Below, one piece after another: positions 1,918 through 51,559 of a stretch of DNA of 64,000 nt. The DNA is from Podarcis cretensis (taxonomy: Eukaryota). Below the pieces are notes generated by a model. That model saw only the letters and a list, made by a program, of their open reading frames with translations, ran no database searches and was not told the DNA's origin. How positions within the stretch are numbered: position 1 is the first letter of the stretch; the number at the start of each line of letters is the position of its first letter. The stretch spans positions 41,912,001 through 41,976,000 of the forward strand of contig OX638150.1 in the NCBI GenBank assembly GCA_951804945.1, given 5' to 3'. The translations under genes were made by a program, and so were the position numbers.

Positions 1918-2508
1918 GGCCACACTACACCATACATATAAAGCACTATGCTCCCACTTTGAACAGTCATTGTTTTCCTGAAAGGATTTTGGGAGGTGGT
2001 GCTTGTTAAGAGTGTGGAGAGTTGCTTTGTTGTTTAGTCGTTTAGTCATGTCTGACTCTTCGTGACCCCATGGACCAGAGCATACCAGGCACTCCTGCCT
2101 CCCGCAGTTTGGTCAAACTCATGTTAGTAGCTTCCATGGAGTTTTCTTGGCAGGGATACTGGAGTAGCTTGCCAGTTCCTGCTCCAGGTGGATCATGTTT
2201 AGTCAAAACTCTCCACTATGCCCTGTCCATCTTGGGTGGCCCTGCACGGCATAGCTCATAGCTTCTCTGAGTTATTCAAGCCCCTCCGCCACGACAAGGC
2301 AGTGATCCATGAAGGAGAGTTGCTAGGAGACCCCTATTTTCCTCACAGAGCTATAATTCCCAGAATTCCCTGTGAATAGCTCTGGGAGAGGAATAGGGGT
2401 CTCTTAGCAACTCTGTAGCAAACTACACCTTCCCATAATTATTTAGGAGACACCATGATGTTTAAAGTGGTGGCATGGTGCTAGAAGATGTATGGTGTGA
2501 ATGTGGCC
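1918..2508. mobile_element. Old non-autonomous DNA transposon (MITE), interrupted by a BovB derivative
   Basis: Terminal inverted repeats GGCCACACTACACCATACAT (1918-) / ATGTATGGTGTGAATGTGGCC (-2508). Confidence 0.65.
2027..2313 (-). mobile_element. Short BovB (RTE-clade LINE) derivative
   Basis: BovB-type 3' end in reverse (GTTGTTTAGTCGTTTAGTCATGTCTGACTCTTCGTGACCCCATGGACCAG); 11-bp TSD GGAGAGTTGCT at 2016-2026 and 2314-2324. Confidence 0.8.
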
Positions 2509-12055: not shown

Positions 12056-12206
12056 AGGGCCATAGAGCATCTGCTTTGCATACAGAAGGTCTCAAGCTTC
12101 AATCTATTGAATCTCCAGGTAGGGTTTGGAGAGACGCCTTCCCTGGAGGACTTCAGTCAGTGCAGATAATATTCAACTCGATGGACCAATGGTACTCAGT
12201 ACATTG

Positions 12207-12453
12207 AAGAAGAAGAAGAGTTTGGATTTGATATCCCGCCTTTCACTCCCTTTAAGGAGTCTCAAAGTGGCTAACATTCTCCTTTCCCTTCCTCCCCCAC
12301 AACAAACACTCTGTGAGGTGAGTGGGGCTGAGAGACTTCAAAGAAATGTGACTGGCCCAAGGTCACTCAGCAGCTGCATGTGGAGGAGCGGGGAAGCGAA
12401 CCCGGTTCACCAGATTACGAGTCTACCGCTCTTAACCACTACACCACACTGGC
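12207..12453 (-). mobile_element. tRNA-headed SINE with (CTT)n tail (Squam3-type)
   Basis: Near-identical to copies at 24127 and 26409; A box TGGTGTAGTGG and B-box-like GGTTCGCTTCC on minus; TSD ACATTG (12201-12206 / 12454-12459). Confidence 0.85.
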
Positions 12454-20906: not shown

Positions 20907-21408
20907 CCTTATTTGCACCTACCTCCAAACTATCATTGGTGAGGTGTGAATGCTGCATCAGTAGGGGAAATATTAAGCACTACAAAACTCAACTATTGTG
21001 GCATATTTGTTACAAGAGGCAGTATTTCTGCACAGATGACTCTTGTTTGTTCTGTTAGCAGATCTGTCTGTGTGTCTTGGTGCATCTATTCCCATACGCA
21101 TGTTCACAGAAGCACAAATTTAGCGATCTTTAATCAGGAGACAATTGTGTGTTACAGTGGTTATTGCACTATGTTACTACCGATTGAGACATCACAATAC
21201 TGTTATGCTGACTTGGAGGAATTAGCAAGAACCAACAAATGTCCATATAAATGCAGAAAACATGTTTAATTACACAAAATGGCAGACAGTAAGTAAAACA
21301 GCTTGGGGTGGGGTTGTTGAAACACCGGTACAGAAGTATAAAATAGCAGGATGGCTAGCTGTGAAAAGTTACAAAGGCCACCCCACACCCCTGTTGACGA
21401 AACATAAG

Positions 21409-21807
21409 TGTCAGGGAACTGCCATCGGAGCCCAGGGAGGTGGCGAGGCTCCCAGACGCTGGGGAGGGAACCAGCAGGGGGAGAACTTCCACTGAGGAAG
21501 TAGAGGAGGGGGAAGTGTCGGAGGGAAGGCTCAGAGACGCTTCCAGCGAGAGCAGCGGAGAGAGCTCAAGACCTCCCATTGGGACACCCACTCTGCGCAG
21601 AAAGCTGTCGCGCAGGGAAGCTAGGCGGAGACTCTCAGTTAAGGAGCTTTTATGTTGGAAGAAATTCAGGAAACGCCCACTGACGGATTCTGCCAGCGAT
21701 TAAGACGGCCACTAAGTAAGGGCTGTCCGGCCAGGGAAAGTTTTAGCCAACTACTAAGCTTGGAGCGGTGTGGCGCTTACGCACAAGCAACCCCTTATCC
21801 CATTACA
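21409..21807 (+). mobile_element. Solo LTR (Gypsy/chromovirus-like) carrying a 97-codon open frame (21410-21703)
   Basis: TGTCAGGGA...TCCCATTACA termini; 5-bp TSD ATAAG (21404-21408 / 21808-21812). LTR orientation is inferred. Confidence 0.85.
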
Positions 21808-21986
21808 ATAAGCTTCTATTTTAACAGTCCTTATAACACAGATAGAAGGCCTCAGGTTCTATGTCACAAAAAAGCAGGATAAAAAAATCTAAGAAAATAA
21901 AATACAAACAAATGTTGGGAGTCCTAAAATTAAATATGTGGCCCCCTTTCCTCCTCATATCTAATGCGCTCCTCAGCTTTACCACT

Positions 21987-24126: not shown

Positions 24127-24390
24127 GAGCCAGTGTGGCGTAGTGGTTAAAGAGCAGTGAACTCGTAATCTGGTGAACCGGGTTTGCTTCCCCGCTCTTC
24201 CACATGCAGCTGCTGGGGGATCTTGGGCCAGTCACACTTCTCTGAAGTCTCTCAGCCTCACTCACCTCACAGAGTGTTTGTTGTGGGGGAGGAAGGGAAA
24301 GGAGAATGTTAGCTGCTTTGAGACTCCTTAAGGGGAGTGAAAGGCGGGATATCAAGTCCAAACTCCTCCTCCTCCTCCTCTTCTTCTCTT
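24127..24390 (+). mobile_element. tRNA-headed SINE, same family
   Basis: GAGCCAGTGTGGCGTAGTGGTTAAGAGC head through ...GGCGGGATATCAAGTCCAAAC and (CCT/CTT)n tail. Confidence 0.85.
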
Positions 24391-26209: not shown

Positions 26210-26720
26210 GTGGCTCAGGAATTGGTTAAGTAGCAGGAAGCAGAGAGCAGGAATAAATAGACAGTTTTCTGAATGTAGGAATCTAGAAAGTGGAGTCCCC
26301 TAAGGATCGGTTTTGGGACCGGTACTTTTCAATTTGTTCATATACATGCTAGAGTTTGGAGGGAACAGTGAGGTAGCCATGTATGCCAGTGATGCTAAAT
26401 GGTTCAAGAAGAAGAAGAAGAAGAAGAAGAAGAAGAAGAAGAAGAAGAAGAAGAAGATTTGATATCCCGCTTTATCATTACCCGAAGGAGTCTCAAGGCG
26501 GCTAACATTCTCCTTTCCCTTCCTCCCCCACAACAAACACTCTGTGAGGTGAGTGGGGCTGAGAGACTTCAAAGAAGTGTGACTAGCCCAAGGTCACCCA
26601 GCAGCTGCATGTGGAGGAGCGGAGATGCGAACCCGGTTCCCCAGATTACGAGTCTATCCCTCTTAACCACTACTCCACACTGGCTCTCTCAAGGTCATTA
26701 AACCAAAAGGAATTAGTGAA
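26210..26720 (+). mobile_element. Degraded CR1 reverse-transcriptase fragment split by the SINE
   Basis: Translates WLSSRKQRAGINRQFS..SGVP*GSVLGPVLFNLFI..EVAMYASDAKWFK|VIKPK, a decayed GVPQGSVLGP..FADD region. Confidence 0.8.
26409..26688 (-). mobile_element. tRNA-headed SINE, same family, nested in a CR1 fragment
   Basis: (GAA)n tail ~26408-26457; body matches 12207-12453; TCAAG on both flanks. Confidence 0.85.
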
Positions 26721-28368
26721 GAGTGTTAGTGTATAAGAGTTAATGCATGTGGGGGGGAGGACAAGAAAGGGTTAATTTAGGTGTGCTTGACCTGCACGTG
26801 CAGCTAGTTAAGTGTGAGTCAGCAAACTTGTGAGAGTGAGTCAGAGAGTGACTCAGCACAAAAACAAAGTATAAATACCCTTGTGCCTATAGCCACTTTG
26901 CCTGGGTCTCCACTCCTCAGATAGAACCTAATCTGTGTAGGAATGCAGCGTGTTTCTGGAAGCACATTTCATTACTTTGGCTGTAAGGACAGAGGTAGGA
27001 TTACTTGTTTATGCTACAACTGTCCGTAGCTCCTAAGCTTGCACAGCCTAGATAAACTTCCAAGAAATATCTGCCACCACGGCTGGGCCCCTTCCTCATT
27101 TCAGGTGTTAAGTACAAACCAAGTGCCTCCATTCATCCGAACTGGAAGGAAAAACCAATTAGTTGCTGGCCATAACCATATATTGCTACAATAACCTTGT
27201 AATTGACATTTCTGGGGTATTATGGAGGCTGAAAGTCATAAACTTAATGAAAGTATGTTTATTGCACTTCAGCTTCATCTCTGATTAAATCAAATTTGCA
27301 TAATGGAAAGTTATTAAATTTCCATGTTTCTAATTTCCTTTAAAAAATAATTTTAAAAAATAGCAATTCAAAGACTTTGTTTATAGAAAAGCTCGATGGT
27401 GCATAGGGGTGCTAGAGAACACACGCCTTAGCTGAAAAATGTTTTTAATAAATTGCCTCAGGTGGAGCAGGCATGTTGCATTGTTCCATCTTTGAAACGA
27501 TTCTCTCTTTCCAACAAATCGGAAAGTGTCCCTGCTCATGTCGTTAAACTGTTTCTGGGCAAGAGTGTGAAGGTGTGCAGCGCTGGAAAAGTAGTCTATC
27601 AGTGCCAGACGAGCCGTACCTCTGCTCTCCCTCGGCCTTGCCATCCTGCCACATTGGCAAAGAATTTTAAGTAGTAGGCATGTTTATTATTATTTTTTTA
27701 GAAGGGAGCATGTTTTTTCTTTTTGTTTTGTTTTTTTGCCAAAGGGTAAATTATTCCTGCTAAGGGTTGAGTTTGGAGCAGTTTTTAATCGCATATTAAG
27801 CAAAACCTTGTGGGTTGGGAGTGTGTGTGTGTGTGTAGGTGGTGAGATTGCTCCTCTTCCCAATAGAGCATTAATGTAAACTACGGTATGTTCTCTGACA
27901 CAGCAGATCATCAAGCAGCCCCTGTAGAATGAAAGGCATTCTTGTCTGTTTGGAACACAGCATTCAATAACTTTCCAGATTTCCTTGGTTCCCTTTTCTA
28001 TCCTAAGCTGGACAAAGTTGCTGAAACATTTCAGCATCAGTTAGCAAAAAAATGCCCTCATCTGAACCTGTTCTCTCCCTTCCTCCTCTGTGCAGAGCTC
28101 TCAAAGTCTAGCTATTTCTCACATCCCCTTTGCACTGGTGAGTTTGGGATGCTCAGCTAAATGTACCTCACGCAGGGACATGCCCACACCCCTCCAGGTC
28201 TCTAGAATGGAACACTTAAAGAGCTCCCACTAACAACATTCCCATTTGGCACAGAATGAAACAGATGCCCACCTCCATGCATGAGAAGAGGTGCCTTCTC
28301 CATCATGCAGGAATTGTGAATCCAAGCAATTTTCTATAAGCCCACATCATCAAAGTCTGTGTTTAATA

Positions 28369-28611
28369 CAGTGGTACCTCGGGTTAAGTACTTAATTCTT
28401 TTGCGGATGTCCGTTCTTAACCTGAAACTGTTCTTAACCTGAAGCACCACTTTAGCTAATGGGGCCTCCTGCTGCCGCCGCACCGCCGGAGCACGATTTC
28501 TGTTCTCATCCTGAAGCAAAGTTCTTAACCCGAGGTACTATTTCTGGGTTAGCAGAGTCTGTAACCTGAAGCGTATGTAACCTGAAGCGTATGTAACCCG
28601 AGGTACCACTG
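28369..28611 (+). mobile_element. Tigger/pogo-like (Tc1-mariner) MITE, copy 1
   Basis: TIR CAGTGGTACCTCGGGTTA / TAACCCGAGGTACCACTG; TA TSD. Confidence 0.9.
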
Positions 28612-30954
28612 TATATGGATGGCTCTGAAGACCTGGTACATGCACTACAAGTGATTGGTTTTTGTTTTTATAGATTCACTATTTTTATTCCCCCCCTCTC
28701 CTTCAGTAAAAGATTCCAGGGTGGCTGGATAAGATTTATTCAACCACGTGAAGAAGCCCAATCTCAAAGCCTATTAACAGTGCAAGACTATACATGCCTA
28801 CAGAGAACTTAAGTCCCACTACGTTCACTAGGACATGCTCAAATATATAAGATTTCCAGCTTAGCCACCCAACAACAAACTTCTTATTTAAGGGCCCTTG
28901 AATTCAAGGAAAAGATCTCCAGCGTCATTTAAATTCACCAGTGCATCCCAATCTAGGGTGCCAATTTTTCATTTTCATTCTCATTCGCCCACCACTCTGG
29001 GTCTCTGGATCAGAATATAACAAGCAGAGGAAGATTATGACTTTAAGATTATACTCCACTTAATGAAGTAGATATGAAATTGCAATGTACATTTGGTGTC
29101 AATGGAAAGTTTCCATCAGCCTCTAATTTGATGTACCCATTTGTTTATTTCATGCAGCTGAAAATATGAAAAGAGGCTCCAATAAAATATTCAAGTCTTG
29201 AGAGAAATATGCTTTGACTTCTAGCTTTCCGTTCTATCCTTCTTGCACCAGCTTTGCTCCTACTTGGGCGATGCCCATGTACTTACAAGAAAGGATTCAT
29301 TAGTGCTAATCCGAGTGATGGGCACATGTGGTGCATGGTGGCTAACAGGGAATCCATGCCGCTACAGAGTGCAGCTGCTCCTTTTCTACAGTGCTGTGCA
29401 AGCACTAATTTATGAGCCCTGAAGTGGCAACAGGGGCGTTTTTAAGCCAAGCCTTTTATGGCATAGATCATAGCAGGCGGGGCGTATGACAGATGTCTTC
29501 ATTAGGAAGGGCCAGAGAGCAGCCCCGGTCCTAGTCAGTTACGCATGGACATCCATGGCTGAGTGGAGGAAACAGAAGCAATAAAACTTGGGCAGAGCGG
29601 TGACTCAAATGCACAAAGAAATTCTAGGCAGAAATGGAGCAGCTTGCTGGAGGGGCAGCGATGGACTTCATCCTGCTGCTCCAGATTCTTCACTTTAAAA
29701 AGGGAGGAGTCAGCAATGAAACAGAGAATTAAAGGCAGCTTTCTCAAGATGCACGTGCTGCAACGGTAAAGGAAGACAGAATAATCAAAGGAAGAAAGGA
29801 CCTCCCAACTGGATCATAGACCTCCACCTTCTGGCAAAGGACTTCTGGACCTTTCATTGGCAGGCAAAGACCAACCAACAGTCTCAATAGTTACATCTCT
29901 GGCCACCATTTCAATGAGAAGAATACCTGTGTAAAGTTTTTAGTATTGACATGACATAATGAACAAAATGGGTAAGGACAAAATTGCCACTTTGTTGTTC
30001 TCTCCCATCCCCCCCACCCCCAGGTTCTTCCATAATATAAAAGCAATTATTTAATTTCAAATGGCATGACCCTATGAAATGTTTAAAAATGCAAATAAAT
30101 ATGGCCCAAAGGACATTGGGCATTGATTGGGAGAGTGTCTCAGAACAGGAGAAAGGTGGTAGCATCTTCTGAACCCTGCCATCCCTCTGCCTGAGTGTCC
30201 TTGTTTTTTCTAGTCAAATGATATACCTCTGTTCATTCAACACAGATGCTTGCCGAAAGCCTTGTATGAGCTGCAAAGCAAGGCTGAGCACAAAGCCCCC
30301 CCCCCTTCTTCTTGAACGTGCACTGCTGACATATGGATAGCTTTTGCTTGTATCCCCAGTGGTTCACACAGTGGCTGGTTCCTCCTCGGCTGCCCCAGCC
30401 CTAGTATTTATCCAACTCACTGGACAGTCAGATTGTCATTCCCAGCAGGCAAGCTGTTAAGAATCACAAATTTTAGCCTTGCCATGTAAATAGCAAGGGA
30501 CAAGACACCTGGCGCTTCCCAAATTGCTTGGCACAGGCAGAGAAGACGGAAACAGCAGACAAGGAGGTTTGCTCAAATTTCTACATATGAGCTCAGATCA
30601 ATGGCAAGTCATGAATGAACAGCTGCAAGTGGAGGAAATGAAACAGTGGCACTCTGCATACAGAGAGCATCCATGAGAGAAATACACAATATCCAGCAGC
30701 TGAAAAGGATGGGAATTTAGGCTGAACCTAAGAGACAGATACATAGTCACAGAACAATCAACACAGGGGGGAAATTCAGTCGCCATGGCTGTTCCCCACA
30801 TGCAGCCCCCATAACTATGTGCATGGTTCTGAATCCTAGACATAACGTGCAAACATGGCAGCAGTCTTCTGGCTGGTGTGATCACTAGTCTGGGGAGGAA
30901 CAGAATTCAACCAAATCCCTACAAATTCCCTATTCATGAACAGAAGATCGGTAT

Positions 30955-33217: not shown

Positions 33218-34062
33218 TTCTTTTGAAGAGCAGGCTAAAAATACTTTAAATAAATAGAATGTAAAACAACCCATTGGAACTGAATTGTTGTGCTGCACAC
33301 CTTTCAGAGTCATACTAATGCAAGCCAATAGAAAAATTACTCTTCCACATTCTATTCAATGGTATAATAACAAGGTTTCTTGGCTGTAGTGATTTTCAAA
33401 ACCCCATATTTTAAAGAGGCAACCACCCTAGCCCTGAAACTTTCCTTGTTTTAGATTTTAGCTCTAGAACCAGATCAGTCAACAAGGGTAAAATAAAAAG
33501 CTTTTTGCAGTCTCCCTAAACAGATATCCCTGGGTTTGTTTTTTTTAAGAGGCTATGATCATTTCCACAAAATTAATAAATATATCCGGTCATTAGTGAT
33601 CTGCCAAGGGAAGGCAGTTGTGGAGGGATGCAGTGGCTAAAGAGGTTTGTCTCAATGAACATCCACCTACGTCCAAAACTGAGGAATCCATTCTGCGCAA
33701 TCTAAGGTCAAAGGCTCCCATCAGCCCCTTTACTATGGGAAATTGATAGACGCAAAGGCAACTGCCTTGTCTCAGGTCAGGCCAGTTGTCCATCTAGCCC
33801 AGCATTTTCTGCAGGCAGAGGACTTTGTTACAATCTGATTCTAAAAGAGAACTGTGCCAGGGTTTGGAATGGAGAAGGATCTTTGTGCATACATGCACGC
33901 ACCTAGGATGCTGAGCAGAAGAGAAGGACATCTTCAACATTTCAGAGAAAAGCTCTATTCTGAGGTACTTATCTTCATCAGGTTCTTCCATTAGTACCAA
34001 CAGGACACACAGCAGTAGCCTGAGTAATCAATGCCCCCTTTCCCTAAACAGCAGCAGCTGTA

Positions 34063-34279
34063 CAGTGGTACCTCGGGTTAAGAACTTAATTCGTTCTGGA
34101 GGTCTGTTCTTAACCTGAAGCACCACTTTAGCTAATGGGGCCTCCTGCTGCCGCCGCCATGTGATTTCTGTTCTCATCCTGAAGCAAAGTTCTTAACCCG
34201 AGGTACTATTTCTGGGTTAGCGGAGTCTGAAACCTGAAGCGTCTGTAACCTGAAGCATCTGTAACCTGAGGTACCACTG
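34063..34279 (+). mobile_element. Tigger-like MITE, copy 2
   Basis: Same TIRs and TA TSD. Confidence 0.9.
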
Positions 34280-36103
34280 TACTGGGAAAAGGAGACACTT
34301 TCTGGATCGCAAAGAAAGAGTTGCTTATTCTAGGTTATTATATCTGCAGGGAAAGAGGAACTCAGTAATGAAAAGCACAAAGCAGACCTCACCAAACCAC
34401 TGCTCTGGACACAAAGCAAAGAGGAGTAACTTGGGAAACATAAAAGCTTGGTGAAAACCTTCCCTTCCCCTGCACTGCTTTCACCCAACATTGCCATTCC
34501 TCTATACTAGTCTGCATCCGCCCTCTAGTGGCCAAGCCTGAAATGGGCTCGAGAGGATAAGAACACCGATGCTTGCTTAGGAACCCTGTTGCCAATAAAG
34601 GACCAGTTATGTTGTTGTTCCTGTTGCTGTTTAATATATACTGCTTATATGTCAAATTGCTTCTCAGTGTTTACAACTTAACATCAATCCATAAGGACAC
34701 TACAAAAAAGCCATGCACAATAAAAGCTGCCTTCTACGAGACATACCAGAAAACCCATTGATCTCCTTCCATAGGTCATGGAATCAACCCCCTGCAATGC
34801 AGGAATCTTTTGCCCAATGTGGTCCAGAGAGTGCAGTTCAGGAGGCAGACTCCCAATGCACCTCTGTGATTCAACAAAGTTCCTTTCAGCTCTCTTTGTC
34901 ACCAGCAGCTACTGGTTATGATAGCTGTACACTGCCTCCAGGGGAAAAAACCAGCATGCTTAAAAATACTAGTCACTGGGGAATGAAGGTGGGAGAGAAT
35001 TACCGGTACTGCCCTCTTGTGCTGCTTGCTGGCTTCTCATACCACCGTGGGAAACAAGGAGGCTGGGCTAGCATCGCCTTTGGTCTGATCCAGCGGCCAG
35101 GCTCTTCCAGTATTCAGCATGCATACACATCCAAGGCCACAAAGTGTGGCAGGCAATCTGCCACGCATTTGCTTGGTGATTTTTCTTTTTCTTTTGCAGT
35201 ATTCTGGAAGAGCTGTCTTATCAGCTGCTGTACAATGCAGGCAACTGATAAGTGGATGCTAAGCTGAAATCTTCACCATATAACTAAATGTTTCTTGAAA
35301 ACTGAAACAGAAAAATGACATGTTTTTACACATTACACACACACCACATTACAAAATATGGTGATGAAAAGAATTAAAAGAAAGCCAAAAGTTGCAAAAT
35401 GCAAATATTAATGAGCCAAGAAGATCATACTGTGTCTGAATGTCCTGGCTTTCCTCATCAGGCTTTAAGGTTTTTAGTTTAGTCTCAGAGAAACAGCATC
35501 GCTCTCGGTCAGTCCACGCACGCCTGGACTTTCTTTGTACCACTTTCACAGGCTTAGCTGGGGCCTGTAAGAAAGCTGGCTTCCCTTTGATGTCAGAGCA
35601 CTGGGGCTCAGGTCACCTGCGAGACTCTGCTTGGCTTGGCTCAGCACCATCCTTTGTAGCTTTTGGCCCAGGTGACTACAGAATGCCAGCACTCTCAAAA
35701 CTGCATTTGTGGGTGTGCACTGTCAAGTCTTTCCCTGAATTGGCTCTTTGTGAAGGCATCAAAGAGGAAGATTTTCTTATCCACTAGTGTTCTATAATGC
35801 AAACAATCTTCTGATATCAGTTCGCTTGAAAGTCAGGCATGCAGTCATTTTAGACAATTCCAATTATTTTAGAAAGCACAATTCAGAGTACTGAAAAGCA
35901 TAAAAGATCACTCAGCTGTTACAGAAAAGAAGAGAATCACTTTTAAACTAGAAAGTTCCTTATAAAGTTGAATTTTGTTACAGAATTTTGTCTCTGCCTT
36001 GCATTATTTACACATATAATGCCTTGTACAGAATTTTTCTCAGTTTGGCATGAATTAGCATGCTAGCGTTTTGGTTCTGCAAAACAAATCCCACTGTTCT
36101 CTT

Positions 36104-39006: not shown

Positions 39007-39442
39007 CCTGGTGGGACTCGGCCATAGCTCCTTCCTGCTCCTTCCTACATACTGCAAATGGATTGAGAAGGTGACATCACCGATAAGGCTGTCTGTAAAT
39101 TCCTTCAGATCCGGTCTAACAGATGGTTGCATCATCAGTTGAGGGAAGCAGCATCTGGACCTATTCTCCACAACAGATCATCACTATGACAGTCTCTGAA
39201 GGGAGCATTATCACAGCATCGATCATCTGTTCACCAAGTTTTGTGAGCTAAACTGCTGTACACAGTCTCATTACCAAGTTTCTGCGCTGTGGTGCTGCAT
39301 GTGGCCTTCCTTAGCACATAGTTAAACAGCCAGTTAAAACATTACAGAAGATAGCAATAGTCTTTCAGTAATAAATATGGTACTAATGTTCTGTGTCAGG
39401 GTCACCCACAGAACCTCCTGTGGTACCTACAATCTCAGTATA

Positions 39443-39657
39443 CAGTGGTACCTCAGGTTAAGATCTTAATTCATTCCGGAGGTCCATTCTTAACCTGAAA
39501 CTGTTCTTAACCTGAGGTACCATTTTAGCTAATGGGGCCTCCCGTTGCCGCCACGCAATTTCTGTTCTCAACCTGAAGCAAAGTTCTTAACCTGAGGTAC
39601 TATTTCTGGGTTAGCGGAGTCTGTAACCTGAAGCATCTGTAACCCAAGGTACCACTG
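39443..39657 (+). mobile_element. Tigger-like MITE, copy 3
   Basis: Same TIRs and TA TSD. Confidence 0.9.
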
Positions 39658-42848: not shown

Positions 42849-42922
42849 GTTGTTGTTGTTTAGTCGTTTGGTCGTGTCCGACTCTTCGTGACCCCATGGA
42901 CCAGAGCATGCCAGGCACTTCT
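42849..42922 (-). mobile_element. Severely 5'-truncated BovB 3' end
   Basis: (GTT)n tail plus TAGTCGTTTGGTCGTGTCCGACTCTTCGTGACCCCATGG; 11-bp TSD AAGAGTCAACT (42838-42848 / 42923-42933). Confidence 0.85.
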
Positions 42923-45900: not shown

Positions 45901-46379
45901 AGGGCAAGCTAAGCCAATTGCCCTCACTCTAAATGCACACCTTCACTGCTGCCCAACCCTGTGGTGGGCTGCTACACTTGCATACGCTTTCAAGTCACCT
46001 TCAAAGAATTGTCAAAAGTGGAGGCAATTTTCAGTGCTGCTGAAAGTGTCCCTGAACAGCAAACCCCATTCTAAACTCATTTCTAAAAATATTATCCAGT
46101 GGTTTATATGGATGTTATGGAAAGAAAACAGAATAAAAGCCAAGAGAAGTATCACAGTTATTTGACTACCAGGAGTTCCACCCAGATCCCTTTTAGTTCC
46201 CAGCAGCCTAATCAACTGTTCAGATGCCTGGGATTAGACTAAAGAGATTCTTTGGGATTCTATGAAGAGTTCTTAGGCTGGGGTAGCAGTAGTGTCCAGC
46301 AGCCTGAATTGCTTTTGGGTGAGAGTGAAAAGGTAATTAAAGTTACAATTAAGATTACACTTCATAAATTTGTTTAGTA

Positions 46380-46624
46380 CAGTGGTACCTCAGGTTAAGT
46401 ACTTAATTCGTTCCAGAAGTCTGTTCTTAACTTGAAACTGTTCTTAACCTGAAGCACCACTTTAGCTAATGGGGCCTCCTGCTGCTGCTGCTGCGCCGCC
46501 GGAGCCCGATTTCTGTTCTTATCCTGAAGCAAAGTACTTAACCTGAAGCACTATTTCTGGGTTAGCGGAGTGTGTAACCTGAAGTATATGTAACCTGAAG
46601 CATATGTAACCCGAGGTACCACTG
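46380..46624 (+). mobile_element. Tigger-like MITE, copy 4
   Basis: Same TIRs and TA TSD. Confidence 0.9.
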
Positions 46625-48048
46625 TATATTATATCCCCCCCCCCCAGTGTTTTTGAAACGTAGGTGTTAGCATGGACAGTGTCAGTTACCGCTATACATT
46701 TTTCAGTGTTTCACATTATACTGCATAATATATACCTCTCAGCTAAGGTTGACCATTTAAATATTCGTGTCCGAGTTTATATTTTATGTCTTCCAAATCT
46801 GCAGCAGCCCTGAAAAAGTTAAAGCGTTATTTTCCCACCCCCATCATCAAAATGCGCTTGGGCCACTTACAGGTATCAATAAATCATTACCTCCGAGTAC
46901 CAGCTTGAGGCTTTGCCTCTTCTCTCATTCTGTTTAAACCAGCAGGAGGATCTGTGACAGTGACAGGTTTGCCCTCTTGTCATGGATCTGGCCGCTTAGT
47001 CTCCGCTCTCTGCTAACCAAGGACAGTGACAGAGCCAGGCAGAGAAGTTCATAGCTAGTGACATCTCCTGTCGGTGGGAAACAGAATGGCCTTGTTATAT
47101 CGGGGCCAAAGGGAGAGCATCACTGGGGTTAAAGAGTACATGAAATTTAGCAGGGTACCTGGTCCAGGCAAAGGAAGGGAAGGGACACTGATAACATCTT
47201 TCTAGAAGGCAATTGTACCATATGGAAGGTGCACAATAACCTATTTGTCCACCTAGGCAGAGCCTTCCTTGGGCAGAAAAGAGTCTTTTCTGCCATCACA
47301 TGCTACCCGATCCTTTCAACTGTGCTCCCTTACTGAGCAGGGGTGGGGAACCTTTGGCCCACCAGTTGTTGCTGAACAAAATCTCCCATCAGCCGCAGCC
47401 GGCATGCTCAATAGTCAAAGCTGCTGGGATTTGTAGTCCAACAACATCTGGTGCTCCAAAGTGCTATGGAGCCTTCACAGAAAAAGTTCCCAGCAGCCTT
47501 CCATTTTGCAGACTGAATGAACTCCAGGTTTCTTGGGATTTTTTCCTCCCGCCCTCCCGCATGGATCATTAGTCCAGGAGAACAGGAGGGATGGGAAGGA
47601 GACTGCACTCGGAATCTATTGCAAGTGTCCAAATCCAACAATATTCTGGGAGAACCATTCATGTGTAGAGCCAGCCCTCAAAAGCAATACAGATGTTTGG
47701 TAGTGGCTTGCATAGGAATAACTATGTACCCAACCACTGCCTGGAAGTAGCTCAGTGAATAGCACTGAACATAAACGTGTGTGATCAAGACCAGAATACA
47801 AGTGAGATAAGCTAATATGGCACTGTAAACTACTTTGTGTTTTTGTGTTAGAATAACCAGTTTAGTGGTGTAAGGTTTTGAGAGGTTTAGCCTATTTTAT
47901 ATATTGAGAACTGTTGAGCATGTCTAACCTGCAACGCTTGAGGATTAAGCACTCTGAATGAGGCTGTGGTTCCCCATGTTTGGGATGACATACACATTTG
48001 CTCTAGTCCAGCAGGGAGATAGAATGAAGGAGCCACTTCACACAGGCT

Positions 48049-48935: not shown

Positions 48936-49772
48936 TGTGGGATGTGAAACACAGAGCAGTCAAATACAACATCCCTAGATTGGACATAAAAGGGGATGTC
49001 TGGACCAGCCAGTCGGAACTTCCTGTTTCCTCCTGGGCTGGTACAGACTTCCTCTGCATGTGACTAGAGGTGGGCGTGGCCTCACCTGTGCAGGTAACAA
49101 AATACCTCAGCGGAGGCTACCATCTCTCTCTCTTTGACTCCATTCCTTGAAGAAGCAACATCTGCTTAGCCTAAGATGCTCTCTTGGCTTACAGCCAAAA
49201 GAGGACAAAGGAGCTATCTCCTTATGGGATAGTTTCCAGGTATACAGTGATACCTCGGGTTAAGAACTTAATTCACTCGTTCTTAACCTGAAACTGTTCT
49301 TAACCTGAGGTACCACTTTAGCTAATGGGGCCTCCTGCTGTCGCCACACCGCCGCCGCACGATTTCTGTTCTCATCCTGAAGCAAATTTCTTAACCCAAG
49401 GTACTATTTCTGGGTTAGCGGAGTCTGTAACCTGAAACGTCTGTAACCTGAAGCGTCTGTAACCCGAGGTACCACTGTATTTCTTTTGTAACTTAAGCCT
49501 GCCTTCTGGGATCCACCTGTGAACAGAATGAGTGAGTAAACTCTTTATACTTTTATAGAAGTCTGTGTCATGCCTTTCTTTTAATGAGGAACTAAAGGGG
49601 AAATGACCAGGAAACTTATTTTAGAGGCTTATACAAGCCTGGTAAACGCTAGCCGCTGCACAAGTTTAAAAGGGGGAATGTTACTCTGCTAAATTGTAGA
49701 ATTTGTTAACACAAGTTGGAAAGGATATAATTAAACAATATATCGTCGCCTGCCTCCCTGAACATTCCCACA
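48936..49772. mobile_element. Solo LTR of a second family
   Basis: TGTGGGA...TCCCACA inverted termini; 5-bp TSD CAATC (48931-48935 / 49773-49777). Confidence 0.85.
49245..49477 (+). mobile_element. Tigger-like MITE, copy 5, nested in a solo LTR
   Basis: Same TIRs (one mismatch) and TA TSD. Confidence 0.9.
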
Positions 49773-50402
49773 CAATCTCTAAGCGGGAGCTGAGAATAAG
49801 AGCACTCTCCCCTCCTGAAGTTTCTAGAAACTGGTATTCAGAAGCATACTGGCTCCAACTTTGGAGGAAGGGCATAGCCATCATGGCCAGCAGCCTTGTT
49901 GTCCACAAATTTATGTAATCCTCTTTTAAAGCAATAGAAGATGGTGGCCGTCACTGCCTTCTGTGGGAGTGAACGCCAAACTGTGGGAAGAAGCACTTTC
50001 TTTTGTCTGCGCTGAATCTTCCAAAGTTCTGTTTCATTTGGATGTCCACAGGTTCTAGTTTGGGACTTTTTTGTTTATAAAAAAAAAAAGTGAGGAAAAG
50101 GTGACGTTAGAAGTTTATAAAATCACGCCTGGCGTGGAGAAAGTGGATAGAGAAAAGTTTTTCTCCCTCTCTCAAGACACTAAAACTTGTGGACATCCAA
50201 TGGCTACATTCTAGTCTTCCAGTATGGACAATGATCTGAGGGCAAGTTAACATATTTTGGTTAAAAGATCAGCATCTTAACTTTTGAGTTCTTTGATGAT
50301 TTTTTTGGGCGGGGGATGCCAACCACACCCAGTGATTTCAGTTGTTATTTTACCCATTAGGCTTTGAACTTCATTGAATATGAAATACCCTTTTATGCCA
50401 AC

Positions 50403-50806
50403 TGTCAGGGAACTGCCATCGGAAAGACAGGCGGTGGAGGGGCTCTCAGAAGTCAGGAGAGACTCAGCAGCGGCGGAAGGCAGCAGCAGGGGGAGAGTGG
50501 GAGATCAGGGAGAGAGAGAGACGAAGGAATGGCTCAGGGAGTCTTCCAGCGATAACAGCGGAGAAGTCTCAGGTCCTCCCATAGGTACACCCACTCCTCG
50601 CCGGAAACTGTTGCACCGAGAATCTAGACGACGCGTTTCCGTCAAGGAGCTTTTGCTGGAGTAGATTCCGTAAGCGCCCACTGTCAGATGCTGCCAGCGA
50701 CTGAGGGAGCCATGCTTAAGGGCTCCGCTAAAAACAGAGCCTTGCTAAGTTGAGCAAACTCTGAGGGACTAAGCTTTACGCACAAGCAGCTCATCATCCC
50801 ATCACA
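50403..50806 (+). mobile_element. Divergent solo LTR of the same family
   Basis: TGTCAGGGAACTGCCATCGGA...TCCCATCACA; 5-bp TSD CCAAC (50398-50402 / 50807-50811). Confidence 0.85.
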
Positions 50807-51559
50807 CCAACCAAACACAACAACATTTCAACCATTAAATACTCTCTCAACTACCACTGCATGCAAGGAAAGGGAAACTTCAAGTAGGTAGAAAATGCTC
50901 CTAACTAGATTCTCCTTTCTCTAAACAACAGTAGTCTGGCAGTTACAAATCCTTCAACCTCAAAGAAACCACAAAGCTATACCACAGAGTACTAAAACTA
51001 TTACTCTCGCAACTCTTTCATATCCAATCAGACGACAGTGTATCATCCACTAAAGTGAGGCTATTGAAACTGGAATTCAGTTAAGAGAGTTCACAATGAA
51101 ATGCCATTGTTTTGCCAATATTTCACCTTCTGATATAAAATCTGACTACTTCTTTTTCTAGTTTTTTCGGTTTCAGGATTTTGACAAAATATTCTGATAC
51201 CTGGACCACAGGTTTATTGTAGTGATTCTCACAAATAGATTTTTCTCAGTCTTTGAAATAGCAAAGAGATAGTTTCTACTCAGCGAAGTTACCTGGTGGT
51301 CTTTGTTTTGCAGTGAAACTGAAACAGACAAAAATAATTCAAAAATAAAGTGAATGAATAGCAATACTTGCATTGGCCGGCTGCAAAAGTCAAATGCAGT
51401 TTGTTGCTGGATTAAAAGCCCTGATACACTCAAAATATGTGAGGAACATTGCCCATAGGCCTCTCTGATTTTGCTCTAGAATTAGTAAACAGTAAGAACA
51501 TTTTTTCTCCTGTATTTTAGAACCAGCTCACCTTCTTTTTCTCAACAAGACACCTGTTT

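What the first reader, a model, noticed from the sequence alone, without database searches (positions are those of the whole stretch)
21409..21807. Solo LTRs carry a protein-coding frame under purifying selection (partner copy 50403-50806)
Seen: both LTRs have a frame open from nt 2 with no ATG. Copy 1 reads VRELPSE..EEVEEGEVSEGRLRDASSESSGESSRPPIGTPTLRRKLSRREARRRLSVKELLCWKKFRKRPLTDSASD*. Copy 2 reads VRELPSE..WLRESSSDNSGEVSGPPIGTPTPRRKLLHRESRRRVSVKELL(2-bp deletion ~50655)WSRFRKRPLSDAASD*. Over the last 44 codons (21572-21703 vs 50575-50704) I count 19 identical, 14 synonymous, 9 non-synonymous (mostly conservative or CpG-decay), one gapped codon and a TAA/TGA stop swap. Four Arg codons change two bases yet stay Arg (AGA/CGG, AGG/CGA, AGA/CGC, AGG/CGT). 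Inference: about three quarters of this LTR was coding in the active element, either Pol (integrase/chromodomain) reading through the PPT into the 3' LTR or an accessory gene. The product is an acidic/Ser linker, a TPxxRRK phospho-site and an Arg-rich NLS/chromatin-binding-like tail. I do not recognise this domain.
Basis: partly seen in the sequence, partly recalled or inferred. Interest (0 to 1): 0.85.

Follow-up and report, generated by a model that had tools for sequence, protein, structure and literature searches.

The report
LTR encodes the integrase tail
Two leftover end-repeats of a lizard Gypsy-type jumping gene contain the last ~97 codons of its integrase gene, an arrangement already known from plant centromeric retrotransposons but here ending in a different, basic tail.

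Summary
21409-21807 and 50403-50806 are solo LTRs (TG..CA ends, 5-bp target duplications ATAAG and CCAAC). Related species still carry the empty site for copy 1.

A permutation test gives 9 amino-acid changes against 18.4 expected, with 0 of 20,000 shuffles as low.

Hundreds of family contigs from four sequencing runs show the same pattern in codons 50-97 and the stop. Twelve of 15 variable sites are third positions, 14 of 16 variants are silent, and upstream indels are multiples of three.

Four natural database proteins carry this tail (one only its start) at the end of an integrase or chromodomain ORF. P0001 matches at E 8e-18, and P0003 comes from Podarcis muralis. So Pol reads through the polypurine tract into the 3' LTR.

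Selection acted on active elements, not on the solo LTRs; copy 2 already has a frameshift. Codons 1-49 form a fast-evolving acidic linker. Only the basic tail, which fits a bipartite nuclear-localisation pattern, is conserved.

Plant CRM chromoviruses have the same layout, so this is a new variant of a known kind. First readers noted the same thing on other pieces of this genome.

The parts
21404..21408 (.). Left target-site duplication ATAAG of copy 1
   Evidence: Read directly. Contigs of runs X3 and X4 join 21403 to 21808, skipping 404 nt with 5 ambiguous letters. This is an empty site holding a single ATAAG (table 5).
21409..21807 (+). Solo LTR, copy 1 (399 nt, TGT...ACA)
   Evidence: The site is filled in run X1 (record 1 spans 21300-21432 with 0 differences) and empty in X3 and X4. 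Between 179 and 1485 family contigs per run align at 80% or more.
21410..21556 (+). LTR-encoded Pol codons 1-49: junction motif VRELPSE, then a variable acidic/Gly/Ser linker (pI 4.5)
   Evidence: Translation. Aligns to P0001 from residue 373 and to the start of the P0003 tail. Of the family variants listed, 12 are non-synonymous and 2 synonymous, with no third-position excess. Indels are 6, 6, 3, 3, 3 and 1+1+1 nt.
21557..21700 (+). LTR-encoded Pol codons 50-97: conserved basic tail (pI 11.7) with a conserved hydrophobic core and a bipartite-NLS-like pattern
   Evidence: With the stop codon, 12 of 15 listed variable sites are third positions (P = 2.9e-4) and 14 of 16 variants are silent. Pair test. 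Conserved in P0001, and weakly in P0005 and P0006, always at the C-terminus. Pattern match.
21701..21703 (+). Pol stop codon TAA (TGA in most family copies and in copy 2)
   Evidence: The variant 21702 A>G dominates the family and keeps a stop.
21704..21807 (+). Non-coding last quarter of the LTR, with conserved blocks TTACGCACAAGCA (21777-21789) and the terminal ATCCCAT(T/C)ACA
   Evidence: Only 55% identity between the copies here, against 74% in the tail. The 1-nt indels in the family fall here (table 4). Conserved block.
21808..21812 (.). Right target-site duplication ATAAG of copy 1
50398..50402 (.). Left target-site duplication CCAAC of copy 2
   Evidence: Read directly.
50403..50806 (+). 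Solo LTR, copy 2 (404 nt), from a different subfamily (69% identity to copy 1 over ungapped columns)
   Evidence: A copy-2-like variant also appears among the family contigs (loose end of X3 at 21638).
50404..50704 (+). Decayed Pol-tail frame of copy 2, with a 2-bp deletion after about 50653 and stop TGA at 50702-50704
   Evidence: tblastn with P0001 matches it in two pieces, 50404-50658 and 50651-50701.
50807..50811 (.). Right target-site duplication CCAAC of copy 2
   Evidence: Read directly.

Best explanation
Both stretches are solo LTRs of a high-copy, recently active Ty3/Gypsy chromovirus family of a lacertid-type lizard.

In the intact element the pol frame does not stop before the polypurine tract. 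After the integrase core, the Tf2-type SH3 domain and the chromodomain, it runs through about 100 residues of acidic linker. It then crosses the PPT/LTR boundary (protein 'G.EVD|VRELPSE', where the T of the Asp codon is LTR nt 1). It continues for 97-102 codons inside the 3' LTR and stops about 105 nt before the LTR end. About three quarters of every LTR copy is therefore pol coding sequence.

The LTR-encoded part has two modules. The first is a variable acidic/Gly/Ser spacer in which only the reading frame is kept. The second is a basic tail of about 48 residues kept by purifying selection in the transposing lineages.

Shown here: the coding status, the selection, the link to integrase-chromodomain ORFs, and the recent insertion of copy 1.

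Inferred: the tail works as a nuclear-import signal and/or a chromatin or host-factor docking peptide that helps place the integrase on its target. Other integrase C-terminal tails work this way. I give this functional guess about 0.35.

Also inferred: the same DNA serves as promoter in the 5' LTR, so it is under double constraint, and the poly(A) site must lie downstream of LTR nt 295.
For: 1. LTR identity. TG..CA ends and 5-bp TSDs on both copies. An empty site with a single ATAAG occurs in runs X3 and X4, while X1 holds the filled site.

2. Link to Pol. phmmer of the 97-aa frame against 1.84 billion proteins found P0001 (474 aa), aligned at its residues 373-474 with 61% identity and E 7.9e-18. 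P0001 has SH3_Tf2-1 (E 7e-20) and Chromo (E 3e-11) upstream in the same ORF. P0003 (UniRef, Podarcis muralis, 'Gypsy retrotransposon integrase-like protein 1') has Integrase_H2C2, rve, SH3_Tf2-1 and Chromo, and reads 38 residues into the LTR homologue. P0005 and P0006, which are 36-40% identical upstream, keep the 'G.DV(R/T)' junction and end in 'LL(C/N)W'.

3. Selection, from the pair. Nine amino-acid changes against 18.4 expected, 0 of 20,000 shuffles as low, and better than all five other frames. Omega is 0.22-0.32.

4. Selection, from the family. In codons 50-97 and the stop codon, 12 of 15 listed variable sites are third positions (P = 2.9e-4) and 14 of 16 variants are silent, including TAA to TGA. 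Loose-end consensus strings translate by hand to RRLGVKELLC and SVKELLCWR, carrying 4-7 silent changes each, among them TTA to CTT (table 7). Indels inside the ORF are multiples of 3, apart from one 1-nt insertion in a single low-depth contig, and the 1-nt deletions lie after the stop (table 4).

5. Precedent. [quoted passage not shown]

6. Tail features. pI 11.7, and the pattern RR-x10-12-(F/K)(R/K)(K/R)R is conserved in copy 1, copy 2 and P0001.
Against: The PPT/LTR junction is therefore inferred from proteins and from the LTR boundary defined by the empty site.

P0001 comes from a 1528-nt contig assembled from a repeat family, so it could in principle be chimeric.

No RNA data were available, so the transcription start, the poly(A) site and translation of the tail are unproven.

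The table of variants shows only the 40 best-supported of 100.

The antisense frame that shares third positions also looks mildly constrained (11 synonymous to 4 non-synonymous; P = 0.037 in the pair).

The function of the tail rests on pattern matches only. Pfam, PDB sequences and the ESM Atlas gave nothing, and the single-sequence AlphaFold model was uninformative.
Confidence: 0.9

Rival explanations
1. The LTR frame is a separate accessory gene, comparable to retroviral genes that overlap U3. It would be translated from its own start or from a spliced message and would not be part of Pol.
For: Retroviral genes overlapping the 3' LTR are established knowledge (HIV nef, MMTV sag). The GA-rich first half could hide a splice acceptor. 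Nothing here excludes an additional subgenomic use.
Against: There is no ATG in the frame, and it is open from LTR nt 2. Four natural proteins (P0001, P0003, P0005, P0006) read without interruption from the integrase or chromodomain part into it.
Confidence: 0.03
2. There is no coding at all. The open frame would be a by-product of purine-rich composition, and the conserved block a cis-acting promoter, R or att element.
For: The sense strand is 59% purine, so stops are rare. The first 49 codons show no codon periodicity. Contig depth peaks 20-30 fold at 21657-21698, which hints at extra nucleotide-level constraint.
Against: Third-position excess and a 14:2 ratio of silent to replacing variants in the tail. 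Two- and three-base changes that keep Arg or Leu. A conserved stop position, the protein-level match to P0001, and indels inside the ORF that are, with one low-depth exception, multiples of 3.
Confidence: 0.02
3. The constrained frame is the antisense one that shares third positions (about 21699 down to 21355). This would be an antisense LTR gene.
For: That frame is open for about 115 codons in copy 1. It shows omega 0.36, P = 0.037 and 11 synonymous to 4 non-synonymous family variants.
Against: Such a shadow signal is expected from shared wobble positions. The sense frame is better in every test (9 against 14 changed codons; 13:2 against 11:4). The Arg AGR/CGN and Leu TTA/CTT switches are silent only in sense. 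The antisense frame is stopped at 50505 in copy 2. Only the sense frame joins integrase ORFs.
Confidence: 0.02
4. P0001 and P0003 are domesticated host genes (GIN1-like) or captured host exons. The LTR similarity would then reflect a captured host coding fragment rather than the element's own pol.
For: UniRef names P0003 'Gypsy retrotransposon integrase-like protein 1'. Domesticated Gypsy integrases do exist.
Against: That name is an automatic label. The tail sequence is present in hundreds to thousands of contigs per genome, bounded by LTR ends. Insertions are polymorphic between species. Several diverged paralogues exist in one species (P0003 and P0004). All of this is typical of a transposing family.
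Confidence: 0.03

Closest known systems
Plant CRM-clade (group A) chromoviruses, such as CRM and Beetle, and the Bingo elements of Beta vulgaris
   Same: They are Ty3/Gypsy chromoviruses whose gag-pol ORF runs past the PPT into the 3' LTR. The LTR therefore encodes the integrase C-terminus, a putative targeting domain (PMC3059260; PMC3605345).
   Different: In CRM the LTR-encoded part is the CR motif, which sits in place of the chromodomain. Here a bona fide chromodomain lies upstream of the PPT (Pfam Chromo). The LTR encodes an extra linker plus a basic tail with no detectable similarity to any Pfam family. The host is a vertebrate. I found no published description for vertebrate chromoviruses in the paper library, though that search was limited.
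Retroviral genes overlapping the U3 of the 3' LTR (HIV-1 nef, MMTV sag, foamy virus bel/bet), from established knowledge and not tested here
   Same: LTR DNA doubles as protein-coding sequence, so solo LTRs carry gene fragments.
   Different: Those are separate ORFs with their own starts or splicing. Here the frame is the continuation of pol.
Integrase C-terminal tethering and import peptides: the MLV IN tail binding BET proteins, the Ty1 IN bipartite NLS that also binds Pol III subunit AC40, and the Ty5 IN targeting domain binding Sir4 (from established knowledge, a lead only)
   Same: A short, conserved peptide at the very end of an otherwise disordered integrase extension, with basic clusters and a few conserved hydrophobic residues. 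This is what I think the tail works like.
   Different: There is no sequence similarity, and no binding or localisation was tested. None of those peptides is encoded by the LTR.

Membership tests
Solo LTR of an LTR retrotransposon | TG...CA termini | tested here: met
   TGT...ACA in both copies.
Solo LTR of an LTR retrotransposon | Direct target-site duplication of 4-6 bp and a precise empty site | tested here: met
   ATAAG/ATAAG and CCAAC/CCAAC. An empty site skipping 404 nt occurs in runs X3 and X4.
Solo LTR of an LTR retrotransposon | Multi-copy family with the same boundaries | tested here: met
   Between 179 and 1485 contigs per run. Depth rises at 21405 and falls at about 21807-21824 (table 2).
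Ty3/Gypsy chromovirus | Integrase with a C-terminal chromodomain | tested here: met
   P0001, P0003 and P0005 carry rve, Integrase_H2C2, SH3_Tf2-1 and Chromo (P0001, cut at its N-terminus, only the last two). The same ORFs carry the LTR-encoded tail.
Ty3/Gypsy chromovirus | Domain order PR-RT-RH-IN and an RT that groups with chromoviruses | not tested
Chromovirus with an LTR-encoded integrase C-terminus (CRM group A type) | The pol ORF continues past the PPT into the 3' LTR | tested here: met
   Shown at protein level in four natural proteins, against the LTR start fixed by the empty site. The DNA junction itself was not read.
Chromovirus with an LTR-encoded integrase C-terminus (CRM group A type) | The LTR-encoded part is the CR motif that replaces the chromodomain | tested here: not met
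   The chromodomain is present upstream, and the tail has no Pfam match. No direct comparison with CR motif sequences was run. This is not a member of the CRM clade. It shares the layout only.
Retroviral accessory gene in U3 | An independent ORF with its own start codon or splice entry | tested here: not met
   No ATG, and the frame is continuous with integrase.
Classical bipartite nuclear localisation signal | Two basic residues, a 10-12 residue spacer, then at least 3 basic residues in 5 | tested here: met
   The pattern is present and conserved in copy 1, copy 2 and P0001. This is a pattern match only.
Classical bipartite nuclear localisation signal | Importin-dependent nuclear import | not testable with these tools
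   Needs a localisation experiment.

The most novel reading that the evidence does not exclude
This lizard chromovirus family has built a disordered integrase extension of about 250 residues, half of it encoded by its own LTR, that works as a modular host-tethering device. The extension would combine two tandem LEDGF/HRP2-type TND-interacting motifs (helix, acidic linker, FxGF) upstream of the PPT with the LTR-encoded basic import or chromatin-anchor tail. That would make it a retrotransposon counterpart of lentiviral and gammaretroviral targeting through chromatin readers, with the LTR evolving under joint promoter and protein constraints.
Probability: 0.2. Interest if true: 0.7.

Novelty: new variant of a known kind. 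Interest (0 to 1): 0.45.

Why it matters
For genome annotation, thousands of solo LTRs of this family carry an intact-looking, codon-conserved frame. They can be mistaken for genes or for novel conserved domains, and standard rules that pol ends before the PPT would truncate this integrase.

For transposon biology, the finding extends the LTR-encoded integrase tail from plant centromeric chromoviruses to a young, apparently still mobile vertebrate family. It also defines a short conserved peptide, and the neighbouring FxGF units, as testable candidates for nuclear import and integration-site targeting.

The same DNA must serve as both promoter and protein. That makes the family a compact natural case of dual constraint.

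Tried and rejected
- Exact and degenerate DNA pattern scans found nothing in metagenome contigs or viral contigs.
- The search for homologous proteins with the 97-aa frame found nothing. That tool only sees proteins of 53-170 aa, so the blank says little.
- Pfam on both frames gave no family even at E = 10. PDB sequence search of the tail gave 0 hits at E = 10. The ESM Atlas gave no usable hit.
- AlphaFold2 on P0001 without an alignment gave mean pLDDT 39.4. Even the chromodomain did not fold, so the model is uninformative and was not used.
- P0002 is a low-complexity repeat protein and is unrelated.
- tblastn with P0001 and P0003 found no integrase or chromodomain remnant in the window. Only the two LTRs matched, so both copies really are solo.
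- No run on record as RNA held the stretch, so expression is untested.
- The plain three-way count of pair differences by codon position is only marginal (P = 0.035). The permutation and family-level tests carry the argument.
Neither Ser/Thr is conserved in P0001 or in the family variants (G replaces S76), so I dropped both.

Full report
**What is in the sequence**

Window 21409-21807 (399 nt) and 50403-50806 (404 nt) both begin TGTCAGGGAACTGCCATCGGA and end ATCCCAT(T/C)ACA. Each is flanked by a perfect 5-bp direct repeat. Copy 1 has ATAAG at 21404-21408 and 21808-21812. Copy 2 has CCAAC at 50398-50402 and 50807-50811.

I laid the contigs of four public runs from related organisms on 21300-21900. 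In runs X3 and X4 an ~816-nt contig joins 21403 to 21808, skipping 404 nt with 5 ambiguous letters. That is the empty site with one ATAAG. Run X1 has a contig that crosses 21300-21432 without a difference.

Copy 1 is therefore a real, lineage-specific and hence recent insertion. tblastn with the related integrase proteins finds only the two LTRs in the 64 kb, so both are solo LTRs. A SINE-like repeat I recognise from squamate genomes (family D7), and the fact that the closest named proteins come from Podarcis muralis, place the window in a lacertid-type lizard.

The frame from LTR nt 2 is open for 97 codons in copy 1 and ends in TAA at 21701-21703. In copy 2 the same frame is interrupted only by a 2-bp deletion after about 50653 and ends in TGA at 50702-50704. 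The two upstream length differences between the copies are 18 and 9 nt, so they are in frame.

The four two-base Arg-to-Arg changes are also as stated.

**Is it more than chance?**

- The two LTRs are only 69% identical over ungapped columns.
- I re-placed the 31 substitutions of the 42 comparable tail codons at random on bases of the same kind. This gave a mean of 18.4 amino-acid-changing codons against 9 observed, with 0 of 20,000 shuffles as low. Half of the shuffles also created a stop.
The antisense frame that shares third positions gave P = 0.037, which is the expected shadow of the sense signal.
- Nei-Gojobori omega is 0.32 and 0.22 in the two ungapped blocks.
- The plain count of differences by codon position (15/11/23) is only marginal.

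**Family-level evidence**

The read-laying run placed 1485, 664, 690 and 179 contigs (at least 80% alike) from four runs on the LTR, so the family is very abundant.

In codons 50-97 and the stop, 12 of the 15 listed variable sites are third codon positions (binomial P = 2.9e-4). Of 16 listed variants, 14 are silent, including TAA to TGA, which is the majority state. The two replacements are R54G and I57L.

Hand translation of the loose-end consensus strings of table 7 gives RRLGVKELLC, SVKELLCWR, ESRRRLGVK and SRRESRRRVS. Each carries 4-7 silent changes relative to copy 1, including TTA to CTT (Leu) and AGR to CGN (Arg). Those two switches are silent only on the sense strand.

Listed indels inside the ORF are 6, 6, 3, 3, 3 and 1+1+1 nt in one contig. 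A single 1-nt insertion occurs in a low-depth contig. The 1-nt deletions lie after the stop (table 4).

In codons 1-49 the picture is the opposite: 12 replacing variants against 2 silent ones, with no third-position excess. That part keeps its frame and its acidic/Gly/Ser character (pI 4.5) but not its sequence.

**What the frame belongs to**

phmmer of the 97-residue frame against 1.84 billion representative proteins gave one real hit, P0001. It is 474 aa, and its residues 373-474 align to the whole query at 61% identity with E 7.9e-18. The second hit, P0002, is a low-complexity repeat protein.

- **P0001** is one uninterrupted ORF containing the C-terminal part of an integrase core, a Tf2-type SH3 domain (E 7e-20), a chromodomain (E 3e-11) and an acidic stretch of about 100 residues. 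Then comes '...GGPGEEVD VRELPSE...', whose VRELPSE is the first LTR-encoded stretch. It ends in '...LLCWKRFKRRPLSDSASD'.
- **P0003** is a UniRef protein of Podarcis muralis with Integrase_H2C2, rve, SH3_Tf2-1 and Chromo. It reads 'GGEVDVRELTSE...' 38 residues into the LTR homologue before it ends.
- **P0005 and P0006** are only 36-40% identical upstream. They keep a 'G.DV(R/T)' junction and end in an Arg/Lys-rich stretch followed by 'LLCWK' and 'LLNWC' within 10-15 residues of their C-termini (pairwise E 0.005 and 0.001).

With LTR nt 1 being the T of the Asp codon, the purine-rich codons 'GGPGEEVD' just upstream are where a polypurine tract would lie.

**What 'under purifying selection' means here**

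The selection acted on transposing lineages whose 3' LTR is translated. A solo LTR is a dead copy that carries the imprint. Copy 1 is intact because it is young: 157-nt contigs differing at 3 places are abundant in other species (records 10 and 17). Copy 2 has already acquired a frameshift.

**Likely mechanism**

Shown: the LTR encodes a two-part extension, a variable acidic spacer and a conserved basic tail (pI 11.7).

The tail keeps two features in copy 1, copy 2 and P0001:
- a pattern that fits the classical bipartite nuclear-localisation consensus, RR, then 10-12 residues, then (F/K)(R/K)(K/R)R;
- a hydrophobic core, V-K-(E/Q)-L-L-C-W-x-x-F, which a pure import signal would not need.

By analogy with other integrase C-terminal peptides (established knowledge, not tested here), I take the tail to be an import and/or docking peptide that brings integrase to chromatin. 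I rate this at about 0.35.

Contig depth is 20-30 times higher over 21657-21698, the last 14 codons, than over the rest of the LTR in all four runs (table 2). This block is therefore shared by many more, and more diverged, subfamilies. It is the most conserved piece of the LTR. Whether a cis-acting role adds to the protein constraint there is open.

Because the same DNA is the promoter-bearing 5' LTR, it is under double constraint. The poly(A) site must lie in the last ~105 nt. Neither point could be tested, because no RNA run held the stretch.

**Comparison with what is known**

The layout is established for plant chromoviruses. [quoted passage not shown] The same is reported for Beetle and several Bingo elements (PMC3605345).

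The present family differs in four ways. It has a genuine chromodomain upstream of the PPT. Its LTR-encoded part is an additional linker and basic tail with no Pfam, PDB or Atlas match. Its host is a vertebrate. My limited searches of the paper library found no description of this in vertebrate chromoviruses.

It is not a retroviral-type accessory gene, because there is no start codon and the frame is continuous with integrase.

I therefore class it as a new variant of a known kind. It is of moderate interest, mainly for annotation and for integration-targeting biology.

**Earlier notes of this scan**

First readers independently noted the same thing on other pieces of this genome, as Pol reading through the PPT and U3, or as solo LTRs carrying an Arg-rich ORF. 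These notes are s1-836684, s1-837402, s1-835086, s1-837099, s1-837419 and s1-836358. They are unchecked notes, and I could not read those windows.

Three further notes (s1-837397, s1-837092, s1-837754) point to FxGF motifs in the integrase tail. I confirmed the pattern in P0001 and P0003. There are two tandem units of W..F, then an acidic/Ser run, then F.GF. This fits the published description of LEDGF/HRP2-type TND-interacting motifs (PMC9987994). Binding is untested, and the motifs lie upstream of the LTR, outside this window.

**Limits**

- The single-sequence AlphaFold model was uninformative.
- The variant table shows only the 40 best-supported of 100 sites.
The comparison uses natural copies only, and the codon hit by the deletion in copy 2 was read as x.

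Noticed in passing
P0001 residues 274-298 and 320-344; P0003 residues 433-457 and 471-495 (outside the window): There are two tandem units between the chromodomain and the LTR-encoded part. Each consists of W..F, an acidic/Ser run, then F.GF. They fit the published architecture of LEDGF/HRP2-type TND-interacting motifs: a helix, an acidic linker of 8-16 residues, and FxGF (PMC9987994). A search of the paper library found no retrotransposon integrase described with this motif.
   Followed up: partly
window 21657-21698: Summed contig depth of the family is 20-30 times higher over the last 14 codons of the frame than over the rest of the LTR, in all four runs. Many more diverged subfamilies must share this block. 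A nucleotide-level signal (promoter or R) may overlap the coding constraint here.
   Followed up: no
window 21403-21813: The copy 1 insertion is absent from the orthologous site in organisms B and C (runs X3, X4) and present in organism A (X1). It is therefore a species- or population-specific insertion, usable as a marker and as evidence of recent activity.
   Followed up: partly
window 21409-21807 and 50403-50806: Both LTRs keep 19 CpG in about 400 nt at 56-57% G+C. I would have expected fewer in a decayed vertebrate repeat. This fits youth for copy 1, but it is less expected for the frameshifted copy 2.
   Followed up: no
window 2027-2096 and 42853-42922: Two copies (93% alike over 70 nt) of a SINE-like repeat that I recognise from squamate genomes (family D7). 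I used this only as a hint to the host.
   Followed up: no
window 28368-28614, 34061-34282, 39441-39644, 46378-46627, 49234-49480: A dispersed repeat of about 200-250 nt occurs in five direct copies 2.8-7 kb apart, 65-94% alike (families D1-D3). Another repeat of 200-230 nt lies at 12206-12453, 24150-24377 (inverted) and 26456-26684 (D5, I1, I2).
   Followed up: no
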